A DNA stretch of 64,000 bases from Gracilinanus agilis. Taxonomy: Eukaryota. Under the pieces are notes generated by a model. The model saw only the letters and a program-made list of their open reading frames with translations, ran no database searches and was not told where the DNA came from. Positions 9,172-48,234 of this stretch are shown piece after piece; within the stretch, counting starts at the first letter, position 1, and each line of letters starts with the position of its first letter. The translations under genes were made by a program, and so were the position numbers. The stretch spans positions 562,971,577 through 563,035,576 of the forward strand of contig NC_058131.1 of the NCBI RefSeq assembly GCF_016433145.1. Reading direction: 5' to 3'.

Positions 9172-9663
9172 GGGGCAGCTAGGTAGCACATTGGATAGAG
9201 AGCCAGGCCTGGAGCCAAGAGACCTGGGTTCAAATCTGGCCTCAGAAACTTCCTAGCTGTGTGAGCCTGGGCAAGTCACTTAAACCATTTTGCCTCAGTT
9301 TTCTCCTCTGTAAAATGAGCTGAATAAGGAAATAAACCACTTCTGGGCAAGTCACTTAACCTTGTTTGTCTCAGTTTTCTCCTCTGTAAAATAAGCTGGA
9401 TAAGGAAATGACAAAACCCTCCTGGGAAAGTCACTTAACCTTGTTTGCTTCAGTTTTCCCCTCTGTAAAACTAAAAGAAGAAGGAAATGATAAACCACTC
9501 CTGGGCAAGTCACTTAACCCTGTCTGCCTCAATTTCCCTCTCTGTTAAAGGAGATGAAGAAAGAAATGACAAACCACACCAGGAGAAGTCACTTAACCCT
9601 GTCTGCCTCAGTTTCCTCCTTTGTAAAATGAGCTGGAAAAAGAAATGGCAGACCACTTCTATA

Positions 9664-9704
<41 letters not shown>

Positions 9705-9965
9705 TTTTTAAACCCTTAACTTCTGTGTATTGGCTCCTTGATGGAAGAGTGGTAAGGGTGGGCAATGGGGGTCAAGTGACTTGCCCAGGTCACACAGCTG
9801 GGAAGTGTTTGAGGCCGGATTTGAACCTAGGACCTCCCGTCTCTAGGCCTGACTCTCAATCCACTGAGCTACCCAGATGTCCCCTCACTCCAGTCTATTT
9901 GCCAAGAAAACTAATTGGGGTCATAAAGAATTGGACACAACTGAAATGACTGAACAACAACAAGA
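9172..9965 (+). mobile_element. Mar1 SINE with internal 5 x ~79-bp tandem array, interrupted by (AT)n and a SINE1
   Basis: Units start at 9267, 9343, 9422, 9501 and 9580. The Mar1 tail resumes at ~9886. Confidence 0.85.
9696..9884 (-). mobile_element. SINE1_Mdo-type, short-tail
   Basis: Near-consensus reverse copy with poly-T and an adjacent (AT)n at 9661-9696. Confidence 0.9.
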
Positions 9966-27406: not shown

Positions 27407-27601
<195 letters not shown>

Positions 27602-27674
27602 TCAGACTTTAGTGGGCTTTTCCATAAAAAAAAGAGGGTAGGATTCTTGGCTCAAGTGTTCCCAGGGTCCAGAG

Positions 27675-27890
27675 CAGGGGTCGGCAACCTTTTTGGCCGT
27701 GAGAGCCATAAATGCCACATTTTTTAAAATGTAATTTCATGAGAGCCGTACAGTGCTCACAGTGCGCGCTCCTGTAACAGCTGGAACTGATCAACATCCA
27801 TGTTGTTTCTCATCTCCTTTCCATGATGGCCAAAAAAAAAAAAATGACTTTATGGATCCTGCAGAAAGAGCCATAGGTTGCTGACCCCTG
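27675..27890. mobile_element. hAT-superfamily MITE containing captured MYO1E exon-19 sequence
   Basis: TIRs CAGGGGTCGGCAACCT / AGGTTGCTGACCCCTG (1 mismatch). 8-bp TSD GTCCAGAG (27667-74) / GTCCAGTG (27891-98). CpGs retained. Confidence 0.9.
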
Positions 27891-30184
27891 GTCCAGTGGT
27901 TATTACTGTTGCAAGAAGGGCTGAGAAACTTGGGAATCCCTTGAAAATCATTGGGAAAATGCTTACACGCAGTGTGTTTAGAAAGCACTTTGTTGTAATC
28001 AGCAATTTTAGAGCTACACATCTCCTTATCTAAGCATTTCTGTCTTAAGCCTCTAAAACCTAGCTTTGAATCTTCTTCTGTCCTCTTAATAACAATAATA
28101 CATTTTTAAGGGGAAAATCTAAACATCTTAGATTTTCTATTTCTTGGCAGTTTTTAGCACACTGTTCTTTATTGCAATGCTATCTTTTCTTGACTACTGA
28201 GCACTTTAACGTCCTGCTTTTCTTCTTATGTCTCTTGTGTCCTTTTTGCCCCTACCTTGGCCCTCTGTTTTCCTCTTCTTTCAGTAGGGGGTATCTGAAA
28301 ATGTGCCATTATTGGGTCTCTACTTTTTTCCCCTTATATTCACCAAATCTCTCCCAACACCCTAATCTTTCATATAGGCTTTCACATGAATGAAGATGAA
28401 TTCCACATTATCTTCAGTTCTTACCTCTTTCATTACCTGTATTCTACAACTAACAAAATATCTTCACTGAATATCCCTATATCAACCTTCATAAAACAAT
28501 GCTTTCATAATGCATCCCCCTGCCCCAAAACCTGCAACTTCCCATTATATTAAGCTCCAATTCCTATCCTTAGTTTTTAGGCTCCCCTATAGTCTAGATC
28601 TAAATTTCCTACTCAACCTTATTTCCTTGGTTCCCTAACCAATTCTGCTTCTGACAGATCCATTATTCAAAAGGCAACATTACTAGGTTCTTCTTAATAA
28701 GGCACCACTTTCAACTGGCAAGTGAAATTGTGGTATGCATGGTTGCTGCTTCAAGTATTTTAAAAACACCCTCAAAGTTTTTTTTTTCCCTTCCTTGAGT
28801 AGAACAAACATTTGCCTGCATATATCTGGTCTATACTATTAAATTGTGAATTTACATCACATCTTGTGAGTGAGTTGTGAGAAATAAACTTCTGAATTTA
28901 TTCAGAAGTAAATTCCAGCCCTGCTCAAGTCCAGATGATCCTGAATCCTGACCAAATCAATAAGGGTCTGTTAATGAGACTTTGATATTTGTGGTTCTCA
29001 ACTTATATCTACATATTCTAACTCTTCCATTTTGCTTTTCTATAAATCCTGCTTAAAGGATCTACTAAATTTTGGGGAAGGTTTTCTCTGTTTGTTTGGG
29101 ATTTTTTTTTTTTTTAAAGACATCAATGTAACATTAAGGTACTCTACCCATCTATTAGTCTTCATTTGAAAACATTTCTGCTTTACCTCTTTTTGTAATC
29201 ATACTTATTCGTGATGACTTTTTATGCCATTAGTACAAGTTATACATAATATATTCTCATCCACTGTATTTCCACTGCCCCTTGGGCTACCTGCAATTTC
29301 AATCCCTGTGAGATTAAGGCACATCGAGATTGAAAGCCAAACAGCAATCCTGGGAGAATACTGGTGTTTAGAAGTAGAACTTTTGTAACCATAAGCATCT
29401 CGGGATCATTTAAAATGTTGTACAATTTCCAAAATGGTATCAAATAAGGGAAAGGGGAAAAGCATTTATTTGGGAACTGCACTTTACAAATATATCTTCT
29501 CATTCAGTTCTGGGCTTAGGCTATTTTCGTTTCAAACCCTATCTTAATATTAATTCTAAGACAAAAGAGTGGCAAGGACTAGACAATCAGAGTTAAGTGA
29601 CTTGTCCAGCTAAGAAGTGTCTCAGGGCAGATTTGAACCTAGGACCTAGTTCCTGGTGCCAGGCTTGGTGCTCTGTTCACTGTGTTACCTAGCTGCCCTG
29701 CTGTTTTCTGAAAAGGTGTAGTAAATAGCACCCTTCTTCTCCCTTTCCCTTTCCTTCTCCCCCGCCCTCTGTCTCTCTCTTCTTCTCTGCCCTTTTTTTT
29801 CCATCCTTCCATCTATTTATCTATCCATCCATCCATTCTAATGGAAACCCAAGGGGTTGTCCATTCAAATACAGGGCATAACATGAACAAGATATAGATT
29901 ACTGATCAGAGCCTCAAGGTTTCTTAAGAGATTGGTATTCCAATTGCCCCATTCTATGCTTGAGGAAACTGAAAATCTCTGAGAGATCACATGCTCAAAG
30001 TCAAACAGACTATAAACCAGAGCTAGATTCAGCACCTCAACCCTCTGCTTCCAGATGTTTTCCATTCTTCCATTTTAGGTAGTTAAGCTCATCTTTTTTT
30101 GAGTGACAACAGATATCAAAGAGGAGACTAGAATTTTGAGATTCAATGCAATTATTATTTTCCTAAGATTAATTTATTTTTCTT

Positions 30185-30371
30185 TTCTTTTTTTTAAACC
30201 CTTAACTTCTGTGTTTTGGATCCTAGGTGGAAGAGTGGTAAGGGTGGGCAATGGGGGTCAAGTGACTTGCCCAGGGTCACACAGCTGGGAAGTGTCTGAG
30301 ACCAGACTTGAACCTAGGACCTCCCGTCTCTAGGCCTGACTCTCAATCCACTGAGCTACCCAGCTGCCCCC
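30185..30371 (-). mobile_element. SINE1_Mdo-type short-tail
   Basis: 15-bp TSD TAATTTATTTTTCTT (30170-84 / 30372-86). Confidence 0.92.
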
Positions 30372-32065: not shown

Positions 32066-32275
32066 GGGGGCAGCTGGGTGGCTCAGTGAATTGAGAGTCA
32101 GACCTCGAGACGGGAGGTCCTAGGTTCAAATCTGGTCTCAGACACTTCCCAGCTGTGTGACCCTGGGCAAGTCACTTAACCCCCATTACCTACCCTTACC
32201 ACTCTTCTGCCTTGGAGCCAATACACAGTATTGACTCCAAGATGGAAGGTAAGGGTTTAAAAAACAAAACAAAAC
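32066..32275 (+). mobile_element. SINE1_Mdo-type long-tail
   Basis: 15-bp TSD AAAAAAACTATCTTT. Intact 3' hairpin at 32192-32256. Confidence 0.92.
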
Positions 32276-35200
32276 AAAAAAACTATCTTTTTTCCTTTAT
32301 TGTTTTCATCAAGAATAACCTCAATGCATTTATTTAATTGTTTATCTTTGGATTTCTTTTGATTTTAAAAATGAATGTTTTATTGATGTCCTTCTTTATA
32401 ATGCTGAAAACTGATTAAGTAAAATCAACAGATGAGACCATAAATGGCAGCATATGTAACATTCTCTACCCTTGGTTCCCTACCAATTCAAGGAAAGGAA
32501 GGAGGTACATTTCCTCATCTTTATTCTGGAGTGAAGATAGCTCATTATAACTGGGCAGTAACTAGCTTAATTTCAGCGTTTATTTTTCATATATGTTATT
32601 ACAGTTATTCAGTCTAGTTTTCTAGGTTTTGCTACTTTGTTCTTTATCAGTTCATTCATGTCCTAGGTTTTTTGGAATTTCTCACATTTGTCCTGTCTTA
32701 TGTCATAATATTCTATAATATTCATTTACCACATTTTTCTTCCTAGCATTCCCTAAACGATAGTCACCCAGAGTGTTTCCAGTTTTTTGTTGCCATTGCT
32801 ACCTCTCACACAGCATACTGCATGCCAGAATAGAGTTCAAATGCGGGCAGTGGTTCTAGTATCGTGATCATGTCTGTCTCATCTCCTGTCTGTAGGTTGT
32901 CTCCTGTCCAGTTGCACCTGTAAAAATACTGATGATGATCTGGTCGAGCAGGTTCTCATGCCAGGTTTTTGGCCCAGACCTCTTTTGTTTTCTAGTCCTC
33001 CTTGTATAAGGGAAACGTTCATATTTGTCAGTGACTAGTCATAATAGTAACTGAAAACTAAGCTAAAGGAAAGAACTCAGTTCAGAGATCTGAGCATACA
33101 TGTAAAAACTTTATATGAGAGCTCTAAAGTGTGGTCTTCATGCAAAGTGTTTTCCAAATATGTACATTTATGTATGACTTCCATGATCTAACTGCTAAGC
33201 CCTTTAACTATGAATGGATGAGGGATAGAGACTGAACAGCTATTTCACTGGCACAGGAAACTCTGGGATGAGCAAACTCAACCAATGTAATGTCAGCATC
33301 AACTTGTGGTCTTTAAATAAACAAACAAACAAACAAACATACACACATGTATGTATATGTGTGTGCATATATACACATGTTCAACTTTATTTTAATCTTC
33401 ATTTTAAAAAACTTGAGTTCTATTTTCCCCTCCGTGCACTGAGCCCCCCCTTATTGAGAAGGCAAGCAATATGGTATCAATTACATGTGAAATAATATAA
33501 AACATATTGTCATATTAGCTATGTGCTGCAACTTCTCATCTAAAGAGGATGGCTTAGAGCACGAGGAGGTAAAGGGTCACAGTGCCAGTATATGTCAGAG
33601 GTGGGTCTTGAACCAAGGTCTTATTGGCTTCAGAGTGATCTCTTTATTCCATCATGTTGCCCTTCTAGATATATAAATTCAACCTTTCATATCTAAATAC
33701 TTTTTTTTTGTCCTTACTTTGAGTAGATATTAGCTACTCCCTGTTTAATTAAATTAGAATGAAAAAGAATGAGTTCCTCCCACTACTCAATCTTATAAAA
33801 TCACAAAAAAGGCTATGAGTAAAAAATGACTATGAGTCAAAAATAATCTACCTTGACATGCTTTTGTACCATCAAAAGAGTACACTCATAATGTAAGTTG
33901 GTATCTATCAATTAGCCCATGATGGGGACAGGTGGATGGCTCAGTGGTTAGAAAGCCAGATGTGGAGATAAGATGGTCCCCTGCGCTGGCGGTTCCCAAA
34001 TTTCAATTTGTTTGTTTATTGAAATTTCAAGGAAACTGTTTTGGCAAAATCGTAGACTTTACCAAATAAAAACTTCACATCCCTTAAGAGTATGTGAATA
34101 ACCCCATTTATTCCAGGAAAACCCTTTTATTCATGTTAGATGTTTGACATTTTTGCAAAACCAATTGCAAGTTAAAAGACCAAGCACTTGACTGGGAATG
34201 GGGGAGTCGGTCCATTCTCCATGAGAATGCTAAAGAATCATAGACTATCAGAGCTAAGGGAGCGCAACAGATCTATAGCTGGAAGGCACCCAATCACTCA
34301 TGCCCAGGGAAGTTAAGTGACTTGTCCAATGTACAGCTGAGCAGATCTCATACTAGAATCTGATAACAACAAAAATGTAGTAATTACTGGAGCGGATAGG
34401 GGGAGAGAGATCCAGGGTTCAAATCTGAACTTAAGACATTTCCTAGCTGTGTGACCCTGGGCAAGTCACTTAACCCCCATTGCCTAGCCCTTACCACTCT
34501 TCCGTCTCATATTCCAGATGAGCTACTTGCATTTCCCAATCAAGTAAGTAACAGTTACCATATAAAGTCCAGACATTTACCCTACTTAAACGTCTCCCAT
34601 AGAGCTTATTATACCTGGTAGGTCGTTGGCCAAGTGGCATATTTACAGAAAAGGTCACTGTGTGGTTACTCTTATTTCACTCAAACATTAAAAGCTGTCA
34701 TCCCCAGCCTCACTACTTTTTTTTAACGTCAGTTGACATCTTGTGCTAGTCCTGGTAATATTGCCAGGCAGTCTTAAACATATGATACCAGAAATAGAAC
34801 ATGAGCCCAAAAGGAAAAATGGTCTTCTAGGAAATATTGGGTTTCACAGGCTAGAGCTGAGCCTTTCCAGAGTCTGCCAGTTCTCAATTACCTCATATCT
34901 TTACATCCTGTTTTTAGGTTACTAGAACTAATTACTTGGAACCTTCTCCAGTAGAATACAATTATTCTCCAGCCAAAACATGGCTATATTACAAATTCCA
35001 GGTAAGGGAGGAGATGGAAGAGATACTCAAAATGCAATGAAACCTCTGGGAGATTCACTTAAGCCAGAAGACACATTGAATTAAAGTCTGAACTATAGAA
35101 GAGTTATCAAAAAAGACTGTAGTTTTTCTCAGTGAATTGAGAGTCAGGCCCAGAGATGGGAGGTCCTGGGTTCAAATCTGACCGTAGACCCTTCCTAGCT

Positions 35201-41189: not shown

Positions 41190-41385
41190 GGGGGAAACTG
41201 GGTGGCTCAGTGGATTGAAAGTCAGACCCAGAGACAGGAGGTACTGGGTCCAAATCTGACCTGAGACACTTCCCAGCTGTGTGACCCTGGGCAAGTCACT
41301 TAACCCCTATTGCCTAGCCCTTACCACTCTTCTGCCTTGGAGCCAATACCCAGAATTGATTCTAAGAGGGAAGGTAAGAGTTAAA
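41190..41385 (+). mobile_element. SINE1_Mdo-type long-tail
   Basis: TSD AAAAATT(T)GAGATACTAG. Confidence 0.88.

Positions 41386-45619: not shown

Positions 45620-45665
<46 letters not shown>
45620..45665. repeat. (CT)n microsatellite (also at 47047-47102)
   Basis: Uninterrupted CT dinucleotide run. Confidence 0.97.
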
Positions 45666-45666
<1 letters not shown>

Positions 45667-45737
45667 ATAGCGAACAGGACTCAAAGACAGCACTGTTTAT
45701 AACCAGCTTCCTTCCTCCATCTTTTGACTTCACGTTA

Positions 45738-45890
<153 letters not shown>

Positions 45891-46655
45891 TCAATGTGTA
45901 GTAAATTTCAGATCCTTTACAAGGTGTTTTAAAAGAAACTTTGCTGAGTTTGAAGATATTGATATAGATTTTAATAAGGCACCTGACATTTTATTAACAA
46001 ATAATATCCGTTGACTTTTCTTGCTTTTTTCTGTAACACTCCTAGTATTTTTTTTTTCCTTGTACCAAACATGCTGATTAGAACTTTTCTCAATATCCTT
46101 GAATTCTGCACATTCCTGTCAAGAAGACATTTCTAATGCCACTGATAAAGCCTGTTTTCATCTTAAAAATTCAAGCTCAACAACCCAACTCAACATGACA
46201 AATATTTATCAGATGCCTATAGTGAATAGCATTCATGGTGCAAGACAATGAAGGGTTTGCAAAGTTTGTAAAAGAAGCTCTCCCTACTCCCAGGGAATTA
46301 CTGACTAATGAGGAAGCAGATCCAGACCCAGATAACAATGATAGACCTATTGCATAAGAGAGCTACCAAAACACAGTTCTAAGTGAGCTCTGAGGAGGAA
46401 GTGACCAATAAATGAAATCAAGAAAGACTTCATAAAGGAGGGAATATGTTTTTTAAAGGATGGGAGGAAATGTGACAAAGCTGGTTGAAGGAAGACATTT
46501 TAGGCATAGAGAGCAGCTTGAGTAATTTCTTGGAGGTGAGAAAGTATATATTATGCTCAGGATTCCAGTTTGGCTGAAGATGTGATGGGGAATAGACTGA
46601 AATCAGGGTCAAAAGTAGGTTGGGGGGCAGCTGGGTAGCTCAGTGGATTGAGAGC

Positions 46656-47046
46656 NNNNNNNNNNNNNNNNNNNNNNNNNNNNNNNNNNNNNNNNNNNNN
46701 NNNNNNNNNNNNNNNNNNNNNNNNNNNNNNNNNNNNNNNNNNNNNNNNNNNNNNNNNNNNNNNNNNNNNNNNNNNNNNNNNNNNNNNNNNNNNNNNNNNN
46801 NNNNNNNNNNNNNNNNNNNNNNNNNNNNNNNNNNNNNNNNNNNNNNNNNNNNNNNNNNNNNNNNNNNNNNNNNNNNNNNNNNNNNNNNNNNNNNNNNNNN
46901 NNNNNNNNNNNNNNNNNNNNNNNNNNNNNNNNNNNNNNNNNNNNNNNNNNNNNNNNNNNNNNNNNNNNNNNNNNNNNNNNNNNNNNNNNNNNNNNNNNNN
47001 NNNNNNNNNNNNNNNNNNNNNNNNNNNNNNNNNNNNNNNNNNNNNN
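46656..47046. other. Assembly gap (391 N)
   Basis: Run of N. The left edge ends inside a SINE head and the right edge begins inside a (CT)n tract. Confidence 1.
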
Positions 47047-47053
47047 CTCTCTC

Positions 47054-47103
<50 letters not shown>

Positions 47104-47174
47104 ATAGCGAACAGGACTCAAAGACAGCACTGTTTATAACCAGCTTCCTTCCTCCATCTTTTGACTTCACGTTA

Positions 47175-47327
<153 letters not shown>

Positions 47328-48059
47328 TCAATGTGTAGTAAATTTCAGATCCTTTACAAGGTGTTTTAAAAGAAACTTTGCTGAGTTTGAAGATATTGAT
47401 ATAGATTTTAATAAGGCACCTGACATTTTATTAACAAATAATATCCGTTGACTTTTCTTGCTTTTTTCTGTAACACTCCTAGTATTTTTTTTTTCCTTGT
47501 ACCAAACATGCTGATTAGAACTTTTCTCAATATCCTTGAATTCTGCACATTCCTGTCAAGAAGACATTTCTAATGCCACTGATAAAGCCTGTTTTCATCT
47601 TAAAAATTCAAGCTCAACAACCCAACTCAACATGACAAATATTTATCTGATGCCTATAGTGAATAGCATTCATGGTGCAAGACAATGAAGGGTTTGCAAA
47701 GTTTGTAAAAGAAGCTCTCCCTACTCCCAGGGAATTACTGACTAATGAGGAAGCAGATCCAGACCCAGATAACAATGATAGACCTATTGCATAAGAGAGC
47801 TACCAAAACACAGTTCTAAGTGAGCTCTGAAGAGGAAGTGACCAATAAATGAAATCAAGAAAGACTTCATAAAGGAGGGAATATGTTTTTTAAAGGATGG
47901 GAGGAAATGTGACAAAGCTGGTGAAGGAAGACATTTTAGGCGTAGAGAGCAGCTTGAGTAATTTCTTGGAGGTAAGAAAGTATATGTTATGCTCAGGATT
48001 CCAGTTTGGCTGAAGATGTGATGGGGAATAGACTGAAATCAGGGTCAAAAGTAGGTTGG

Positions 48060-48234
48060 GGGGCAGCTGGGTAGCTCAGTGGATTGAGAGCTGGGCCTAG
48101 AGACAGGAGGTCCTAGGTTCATATCCGGCCTCAGACACTTCCCAGCTGTGTGACCCTGGGCAAGTCACTTGACCCCCATTGCCTACCCTTGCCAATCTTC
48201 CACCTATAAATCAATACACAGAAGTTAAGGGTTT

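What the first reader, a model, noticed from the sequence alone, without database searches (positions are those of the whole stretch)
27675..27890. Young hAT MITE has captured a rearranged copy of the adjacent MYO1E exon 19
Seen: inside a MITE with 16-bp TIRs and an 8-bp TSD, bases 27779-27833 consist of two exact pieces of exon 19. AGCTGGAACTGATCAACATCCATGTTG matches 27459-27485 (27 bp) and TTGTTTCTCATCTCCTTTCCATGATGGCCAA matches 27512-27542 (31 bp). They are joined through a 3-bp TTG microhomology that skips the 26 bp lying between the two source pieces. The outer junctions are compatible with AG and AA microhomology. The donor exon lies only ~290-320 bp away in the same orientation. Established: locally templated, microhomology-joined insertions are the signature of polymerase-theta end joining or aborted gap repair, the route proposed for Pack-MULE-type gene capture, which is known mainly from plants. 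Inference: this is a snapshot of host-exon capture by a mammalian DNA transposon. The exact identity to the exon implies a recent event.
Basis: partly seen in the sequence, partly recalled or inferred. Interest (0 to 1): 0.78.

Follow-up and report, generated by a model that had tools for sequence, protein, structure and literature searches.

The report
Exon-derived filler inside a hAT MITE
One copy of a very abundant small transposon relic, sitting in an intron of a class-I myosin gene in an opossum, carries a 51-base patch copied in two pieces from the exon about 300 bases away; this is a tidy repair or replication scar of a kind already catalogued in animal genomes, with no sign that the transposon carried the exon piece anywhere else.

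Summary
Bases 27779-27805 and 27803-27833 are exact copies of 27459-27485 and 27512-27542. They overlap at TTG and lie inside a 216-bp TIR-bounded element (TIR 15/16, TSD 7/8). The donor is the last motor-domain exon of a class-I myosin on the minus strand.

About 13,000 paralogous contigs from one public run show that the family has GCCTG plus an A-run where this copy has the insert. So the insert is private, not part of the family consensus. It replaces 5 nt with 51 nt. The three joints carry 3, 3 and 2 nt of microhomology (joint chance about 4e-4).

Independent read support is only indirect. A contig of that run starts at exactly 27513, as a k=31 graph predicts only if the exon 30-mer has a second context. 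No contig was laid over piece 1.

The best reading is microhomology-guided template switching during repair of a lesion inside the MITE. That makes it a small single-copy "Pack-TIR". Tan et al. 2021 described 370 of these in animals (33 in human, 2 in opossum) and attributed most to transposition-independent gap filling. The data do not support the "mainly plants" and "captured by the transposon" framing, or mobilisation. This is a new member of a known kind, of modest interest.

The parts
27675..27890 (.). hAT-type MITE copy, 216 bp now and about 169 bp before the filler arose
   Evidence: TIRs and TSD. About 12,900 paralogous contigs were laid on its arms at a depth 10^4-10^5 times that of the unique flanks.
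27675..27690 (+). left TIR, CAGGGGTCGGCAACCT
27875..27890 (-). right TIR, 15/16 match to the left TIR (CG versus CA)
27667..27674 (.). left target-site duplication, GTCCAGAG
   Evidence: it fits the hAT target pattern nTnnnnAn
27891..27898 (.). right target-site duplication, GTCCAGTG (7/8)
27782..27831 (+). filler proper: the letters with no counterpart in the family; the family reads GCCTG at this site
   Evidence: In one search, paralog contigs stop at 27780/27781 and resume at 27834-27838. The letters between are GCCTG and its CpG-decay variants.
27779..27805 (+). copy of exon piece 1 (27 nt); its first 3 nt, AGC, are shared with the MITE
27803..27833 (+). copy of exon piece 2 (31 nt); its first 3 nt, TTG, are shared with piece 1 and its last AA with the MITE A-run
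27832..27844 (+). A-run of 13 (the family has about 8-9), where synthesis returned to the MITE
   Evidence: loose-end consensus
27459..27485 (+). donor segment 1, inside the exon
27512..27542 (+). donor segment 2, inside the exon
27423..27561 (-). class-I myosin exon (end of the motor domain), the donor; the MITE begins 113 nt upstream of its 3' splice site in gene orientation

Best explanation
A lesion arose inside an already inserted hAT MITE copy, at ...AACAGC|GCCTG|AAAA. It was either a double-strand break or a stalled fork. It was repaired by synthesis that switched template three times at 2-3 nt microhomologies. The growing strand ending in AGC re-annealed 320 nt back, in the neighbouring exon, and copied 24 nt. 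It slipped forward 27 nt at a TTG and copied 28 nt. It then returned to the MITE at the A-run through AA. Five MITE bases were lost and 51 gained. The product is a small, single-copy, cis-derived 'Pack-TIR' made by transposition-independent gap filling (TMEJ or MMBIR/FoSTeS-type). It has no expected function and was not propagated. Shown here: the sequence identities, the family sequence at the site, the microhomologies and the single-copy state in the one run. Inferred: the order of the switches, the enzyme pathway and independence from transposase.
For: The exact two-piece identity occurs nowhere else in the window. The family reads GCCTG plus an A-run at the site, so the insert is private and is a replacement with a 5-nt loss (joints, letters between, loose ends). 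Microhomologies of 3, 3 and 2 nt have a joint chance probability of 4.4e-4 under random switch points. The gap is 3% of the element, the breakpoint lies at relative position 0.63 and the donor is under 0.4 kb away in cis. These are the features Tan et al. 2021 report for single-copy animal Pack-TIRs and attribute to transposition-independent gap filling. Summed depth over the filler is 4.57 and 50.9 against about 25 for unique flanks and 10^5-10^6 for the arms, so no multi-copy carrier of the filler was seen. One contig of run X1 spans 27513-27693. A k=31 graph of the window starts that unitig at 27513 only when the insert is present; without it the unitig runs back to 27025.
Against: No contig of the only available run was laid across piece 1 (27786-27803). 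In addition, 9 of 62 sampled words were missing, about the number of insert-specific words. So the insert could be absent, heterozygous or polymorphic in that sample, or its contigs were dropped or filtered. The donor distance of 290-320 nt is longer than the roughly 100 nt typical of catalogued MMBIR or TMEJ templated inserts. A single event cannot separate transposase-induced gap repair from a spontaneous break. The pre-insertion sequence is inferred from paralogs, not from an empty allele.
Confidence: 0.68

Rival explanations
1. Transposase-dependent abortive gap repair. The MITE was excised while the family was active. The gap was refilled from the sister chromatid by SDSA. The two nascent strands met inside the element after a detour onto the nearby exon.
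For: The copy is close to the family majority sequence: only two positions differ, both CpG decays (table 3). The filler therefore cannot be shown to be younger than the insertion; 0/55 differences is compatible with the same age. Filler DNA at internal junctions is a classical outcome of P-element and Ac/Ds gap repair (established knowledge, cited in PMC8277862).
Against: Abortive gap repair is expected to give larger internal deletions with breakpoints biased towards the termini. Here only 5 of about 169 nt are missing and the breakpoint is internal. In primates most such single-copy events post-date transposon activity. No autonomous partner or activity date could be tested.
Confidence: 0.17
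2. Assembly or sequencing artefact. The 51-nt patch would then not exist in the animal's genome.
For: No contig of run X1 covers 27786-27803. The share of words held (0.85) equals what is expected if all insert-specific 31-mers are missing. The same window holds an evident assembly artefact elsewhere, a ~1-kb duplication flanking an N gap.
Against: Three microhomology-mediated joints and a clean 5-nt replacement are a biological signature, not a typical consensus error. The X1 contig boundary at exactly 27513 implies a second context for the exon 30-mer in the reads. The depth of 4.57 in bin 27786-27805 fits a contig starting at 27804, as expected for the filler-to-A-run path, although that decomposition is not unique. 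Logan contigs drop low-coverage paths beside high-copy repeats, and the tool itself warns that a hole proves nothing.
Confidence: 0.1
3. True Pack-MULE-like capture followed by mobilisation. The chimeric MITE would have transposed and exist at other loci.
For: The TIRs are nearly intact, the family is extremely abundant and the copy is near consensus.
Against: Summed depth over the filler never exceeds about two single-copy equivalents, while the arms reach 10^5-10^6. There is no second copy in the window. Only 4 of 281 unique animal Pack-TIRs are multicopy.
Confidence: 0.03

Closest known systems
Single-copy animal Pack-TIRs (Tan et al. 2021, Nat Commun 12:4280, PMC8277862)
   Same: Host sequence lies between the two ends of one TIR element, and hAT is the commonest carrier. 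The parental copy is in cis within a few kb. There is microhomology at the breakpoints, a tiny gap in the TE, internal breakpoints and a single copy. Exonic sources are over-represented.
   Different: The filler is only 51-55 nt, while their pipeline required more than 100 bp. It is built from two non-adjacent donor pieces and covers 65% of the donor span, against their 80-120% rule. It is therefore below and outside their catalogue. Their two opossum cases are other loci.
Pack-MULEs of rice and maize
   Same: A gene fragment sits between transposon TIRs.
   Different: Pack-MULEs are often multicopy, several hundred bp long, GC-rich, frequently transcribed and carried by Mutator-like elements with 9-bp TSDs. 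Here there is one copy, 51 nt, a hAT-type carrier and an 8-bp TSD, with no evidence of movement.
Templated insertions of polymerase-theta end joining and MMBIR/FoSTeS
   Same: Short patches copied from nearby DNA, serial template switches, 1-4 nt of microhomology at each joint and a small deletion at the break.
   Different: The donor lies 290-320 nt away, against a usual distance within about 100 nt. The total length is at the long end for TMEJ. The enzyme cannot be assigned from one scar.
Filler DNA in internally deleted Ac/Ds and P elements (abortive gap repair)
   Same: Filler from flanking DNA sits at an internal junction of a cut-and-paste element.
   Different: Those events delete large internal parts of an autonomous element. 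Here a MITE lost 5 nt.

Membership tests
hAT-superfamily MITE | 8-bp target-site duplication | tested here: met
   GTCCAGAG / GTCCAGTG, 7 of 8 identical, directly abutting the TIRs.
hAT-superfamily MITE | Target consensus nTnnnnAn | tested here: met
   This TSD fits the pattern. The flanks of paralogs give the consensus CTCTAGAG on both sides (loose ends). The pattern itself is recalled from the literature.
hAT-superfamily MITE | Short terminal inverted repeats starting CAG, small size, no coding capacity, many copies | tested here: met
   16-nt TIRs match at 15/16. The element was about 169 bp before the filler. 12,942 contigs were laid, and arm depth is 10^4-10^5 times the unique depth.
hAT-superfamily MITE | Termini shared with an autonomous element encoding a hAT transposase; named Repbase/Dfam family | not testable with these tools
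   No repeat library or whole-genome search was available. The TIR string has no hit in the paper library.
Pack-TIR (operational definition of Tan et al. 2021) | Both flanking parts cover at least 10 bp of the termini of one TIR element | tested here: met
   Both TIRs are complete, with 107-nt and 57-nt arms.
Pack-TIR (operational definition of Tan et al. 2021) | Internal non-TE sequence with a unique parental copy at 90% identity or more, and a parent not flanked by TEs within 100 bp | tested here: met
   Identity to the exon is 100% and unique within the window. The MITE starts 133 nt from the donor's end. Genome-wide uniqueness was not tested.
Pack-TIR (operational definition of Tan et al. 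2021) | Internal sequence 100-5000 bp and 80-120% of the parental length | tested here: not met
   The internal sequence is 51-55 nt. The donor span is 84 nt, a ratio of 0.65 because 26 nt were skipped. It works like a Pack-TIR but falls under the catalogue's thresholds.
Mobilised gene capture (Pack-MULE sense) | Two or more copies of the chimeric element with different TSDs | tested here: not met
   No second copy in the window. Summed contig depth over the filler is at most about two single-copy equivalents in run X1. This rests on one run and contigs only, so the test is weak.
Microhomology-mediated templated insertion (TMEJ / MMBIR) | Insert identical to nearby sequence, microhomology at every joint, small loss at the break | tested here: met
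   Microhomologies of 3, 3 and 2 nt, joint P=4.4e-4. 5 nt were lost. The donor is 290-320 nt away.
Microhomology-mediated templated insertion (TMEJ / MMBIR) | Dependence on Pol theta or on break-induced replication factors | not testable with these tools
   This needs genetics; a single germline scar cannot assign the enzyme.

The most novel reading that the evidence does not exclude
The filler arose while the hAT family was still being cut and pasted in the opossum lineage, during repair of an excision gap. The chimeric element kept working ends, so this would be a nascent, potentially mobile exon-carrying hAT MITE in a mammal, and it may be polymorphic in living animals.
Probability: 0.07. 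Interest if true: 0.6.

Novelty: new member of a known kind. Interest (0 to 1): 0.3.

Why it matters
It is a very clean, fully resolvable example of serial template switching in a mammalian germline: three joints, each with microhomology, and the donor and recipient 300 nt apart. It also shows that published Pack-TIR catalogues, which require more than 100 bp, miss a class of shorter, composite fillers. It does not change what is known about how such structures arise, and no effect on the myosin gene is expected.

Tried and rejected
- **Family consensus from the window.** There is no other copy of the MITE, even at word size 7, so I took the consensus from paralogous contigs instead.
- **Independent runs.** Only one run was served, and only as contigs.
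- **Exact look-up of ORFs.** Two ORFs that read through the joints were absent from the 15-billion protein collection. Two control ORFs from the unique flank and exon were absent too, so the result says nothing.
- **TIR string in papers.** No hits.
- **Hairpin-tip breakage.** In a DNA fold of the reconstructed pre-insertion element, the site lies in a small internal stem, not at the apical loop. I dropped this as a specific cause.
- **Retrocopy with a poly(A) tail.** Rejected, because the A-run belongs to the family and the copied strand is antisense to the mRNA.
- **Spliced protein model.** I did not build one.

Full report
**What is in the sequence**

The stretch 27675-27890 is a 216-bp element. 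Its 16-nt terminal inverted repeats read CAGGGGTCGGCAACCT on the left. The right arm matches at 15/16, with CA where the left has CG. Directly outside lie GTCCAGAG and GTCCAGTG, an 8-bp target-site duplication with one mismatch.

Inside the element, 27779-27805 is identical to 27459-27485 (27 nt) and 27803-27833 is identical to 27512-27542 (31 nt). Both are in direct orientation, overlap at TTG and skip 26 source bases. Neither string occurs anywhere else in the 64-kb window, and shuffles expect none. The only correction is that neither the TIR nor the TSD is perfect.

**The donor**

The segment 27423-27561 on the minus strand has splice-site-like borders. One frame reads [45 protein letters not shown]. 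This matches the last ~45 positions of Pfam Myosin_head and residues ~640-690 of solved myosin-Ib, -Ic and Dictyostelium myosin-IE motors. So it is the exon that ends the motor domain of a class-I myosin.

I did not verify that the gene is MYO1E or that this is exon 19. The MITE begins 113 nt upstream of this exon's 3' splice site in gene orientation.

**Is the insert part of the family?**

The window has no second copy of the element. The one public run that holds the locus (X1, contigs only) was therefore laid at 80% likeness on 27566-28165.

- Unique flanks have depth about 24-26.
- The left arm reaches 0.8-4.7 million and the right arm about 1.1 million, from 12,942 contigs. This is a family of tens of thousands of copies or more.
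- Paralogous contigs align up to 27780/27781 and resume at 27834-27838.
- The letters they carry in between are GCCTG or its CpG-decay variants (ACCTG, TGCCTG, GCATG), followed by an A-run and TGACTTTATGG.

The family therefore reads ...TGTAACAGC-GCCTG-AAAAAAAA-TGACTTT..., while this copy reads ...TGTAACAGC-[51 nt]-A13-TGACTTT. The insert is private to this copy, and it replaced 5 nt.

**Junctions**

Against that family sequence the left joint shares AGC (3 nt), the middle joint TTG (3 nt) and the right joint AA (2 nt). With random switch points in the same sequences, the chance probabilities are 0.056, 0.059 and 0.163, and 4.4e-4 jointly. This is the signature of serial microhomology-guided template switching. 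One consistent order of events is:

1. A 3' end ...AGC leaves the MITE and anneals at 27459-27461.
2. It copies to 27485.
3. It re-anneals by TTG at 27512-27514.
4. It copies to 27542.
5. It returns by AA to the A-run, bypassing GCCTG.

**Does the insert exist outside the assembly?**

The evidence here is mixed, and I could not settle it.

*Against, or neutral:*

- No contig was laid over 27786-27803, where the bin depth is 4.57.
- X1 holds 0.85 of 62 sampled words. The 9 missing words equal the expected number of insert-specific 31-mers (84 of 570).
- The tool warns that holes prove nothing. Logan contigs drop low-coverage paths that hang on high-copy repeats, and human-like contigs are silently removed.

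*For:*

- Contig record 1 is 181 nt long. 128 nt of it lie on 27566-27693 and 53 nt run off to the left, so it starts at 27513.
- The 31-mer 27512-27542 is the only word shared by the exon and the filler. A k=31 de Bruijn graph of the window starts the unitig at exactly 27513 when the filler is present. It runs back to 27025 when I replace the filler by GCCTG. A break at that exact base is not expected otherwise.
- The 4.57 in bin 27786-27805 equals 45.7 x 2/20. That is what a contig starting at 27804 (the first word after the shared 31-mer on the filler side) would give. This decomposition is not unique.
- The flanks of X1 are identical to the window over 128 + 305 nt.

I put the probability that the filler is real in the genome at about 0.85-0.9. 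Whether X1 is the assembly's own sample is unknown.

**Mobilisation**

Summed depth over the filler is 4.57 and 50.9, against 10^5-10^6 on the arms and about 25 on unique DNA. No multi-copy carrier of the filler is visible. This test is weak, resting on one run of contigs, but it points to a single copy.

**Age**

Only two arm positions differ from the letter carried by most of the family: 27713 (TG for CG) and 27739 (CA for CG). Both are CpG decays, and five CpGs are intact. The copy is therefore fairly close to its family's majority sequence. Most paralogous contigs are 90-99% like it.

The filler has no CpG and no difference from the exon. That only bounds pairwise divergence below about 5.4% at the 95% level, and at 1-2% divergence zero differences is still likely. 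So 'recent' is permitted but not demonstrated, and the filler cannot be shown to be younger than the insertion.

**Mechanism and comparison**

Tan et al. 2021 (PMC8277862) searched 100 animal genomes for host sequence between the ends of one TIR element.

- They found 370 'Pack-TIRs': 208 in hAT elements, 33 in human and 2 in opossum monDom5, both at other loci.
- Nearly all are single-copy.
- 57% lie within 15 kb of the parent, mostly under 5 kb.
- 68% have microhomology, with a median of 2 bp.
- The TE gap is a median 4.6% of the element, and breakpoints are skewed to the interior.
- In primates most arose after DNA transposons had died.
- They conclude that most come from transposition-independent gap filling after a break inside the TE.

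The present case has every one of these traits: cis donor at 0.3 kb, 2-3 nt of microhomology, a 3% gap and a breakpoint at relative position 0.63. It falls under their size cut-off (more than 100 bp) and their length-ratio rule, because it is short and composite.

It therefore works like a Pack-TIR and is best filed as a small, previously uncatalogued member of that kind. The enzymology cannot be assigned from one scar; candidates are Pol-theta end joining copying from the opposite resected tail, and MMBIR/FoSTeS at a stalled fork. The donor distance is longer than the roughly 100 nt typical of catalogued templated insertions. Transposase-induced abortive gap repair remains possible (about 0.17), because the copy is near consensus, but the tiny internal gap argues against it. 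A DNA fold of the reconstructed element does not place the site at a hairpin tip.

**Verdict**

It overreaches in calling this capture by the transposon and in treating it as rare outside plants. Novelty: new member of a known kind. Interest: 0.3.

Noticed in passing
window 45655-46655 and 47092-48092, flanking the N run 46656-47046: About 1 kb of near-identical sequence is repeated in direct orientation at an offset of 1436-1437, on either side of the 391-N gap. This looks like unmerged overlapping contig ends (a false duplication at an assembly gap) and not a biological duplication. I did not try to fill or look up the N run.
   Followed up: no
flanks of paralogous copies laid at 27671-27675 and 27890 (loose ends): Flanks of other family members give a weak consensus...TTAATCCTCTAGAG before the element and CTCTAGAGGATTAA... 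after it. That is a palindromic preferred target, CTCTAGAG as the TSD, within a wider palindrome. It could be a strong target preference or frequent nesting in another palindromic repeat. Agreement is only about 0.4.
   Followed up: no
window 27693/27694: The X1 contig from the left flank stops at 27693, inside the TIR's T-run, although its last 31-mer still holds 12 unique flank bases. That implies a branch at 27694. The cause could be a T-run length allele in that sample, or another family copy that shares 11 flank bases through the target-site preference.
   Followed up: partly
window 27675-27780 versus 27846-27885: Summed depth on the left arm (up to 4.7 million) is about four times that on the right arm (about 1.1 million). 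The left arm seems to be shared by a larger set of related MITE families than the right arm.
   Followed up: no
window 9507-9780, 30260-30306, 32151-32187, 34440-34470, 41264-41301, 48059-48183: Other exact local repeats of 24-47 nt in the window are pieces of dispersed SINE-like repeats (shared cores GCTGTGTGACCCTGGGCAAGTCACTT and GGGGGCAGCTGGGTAGCTCAGTGGATTGAGAG), not templated insertions. In this screen the exon/filler pair was the only exact local repeat of 24 nt or more, within 3 kb, that involved the exon.
   Followed up: partly
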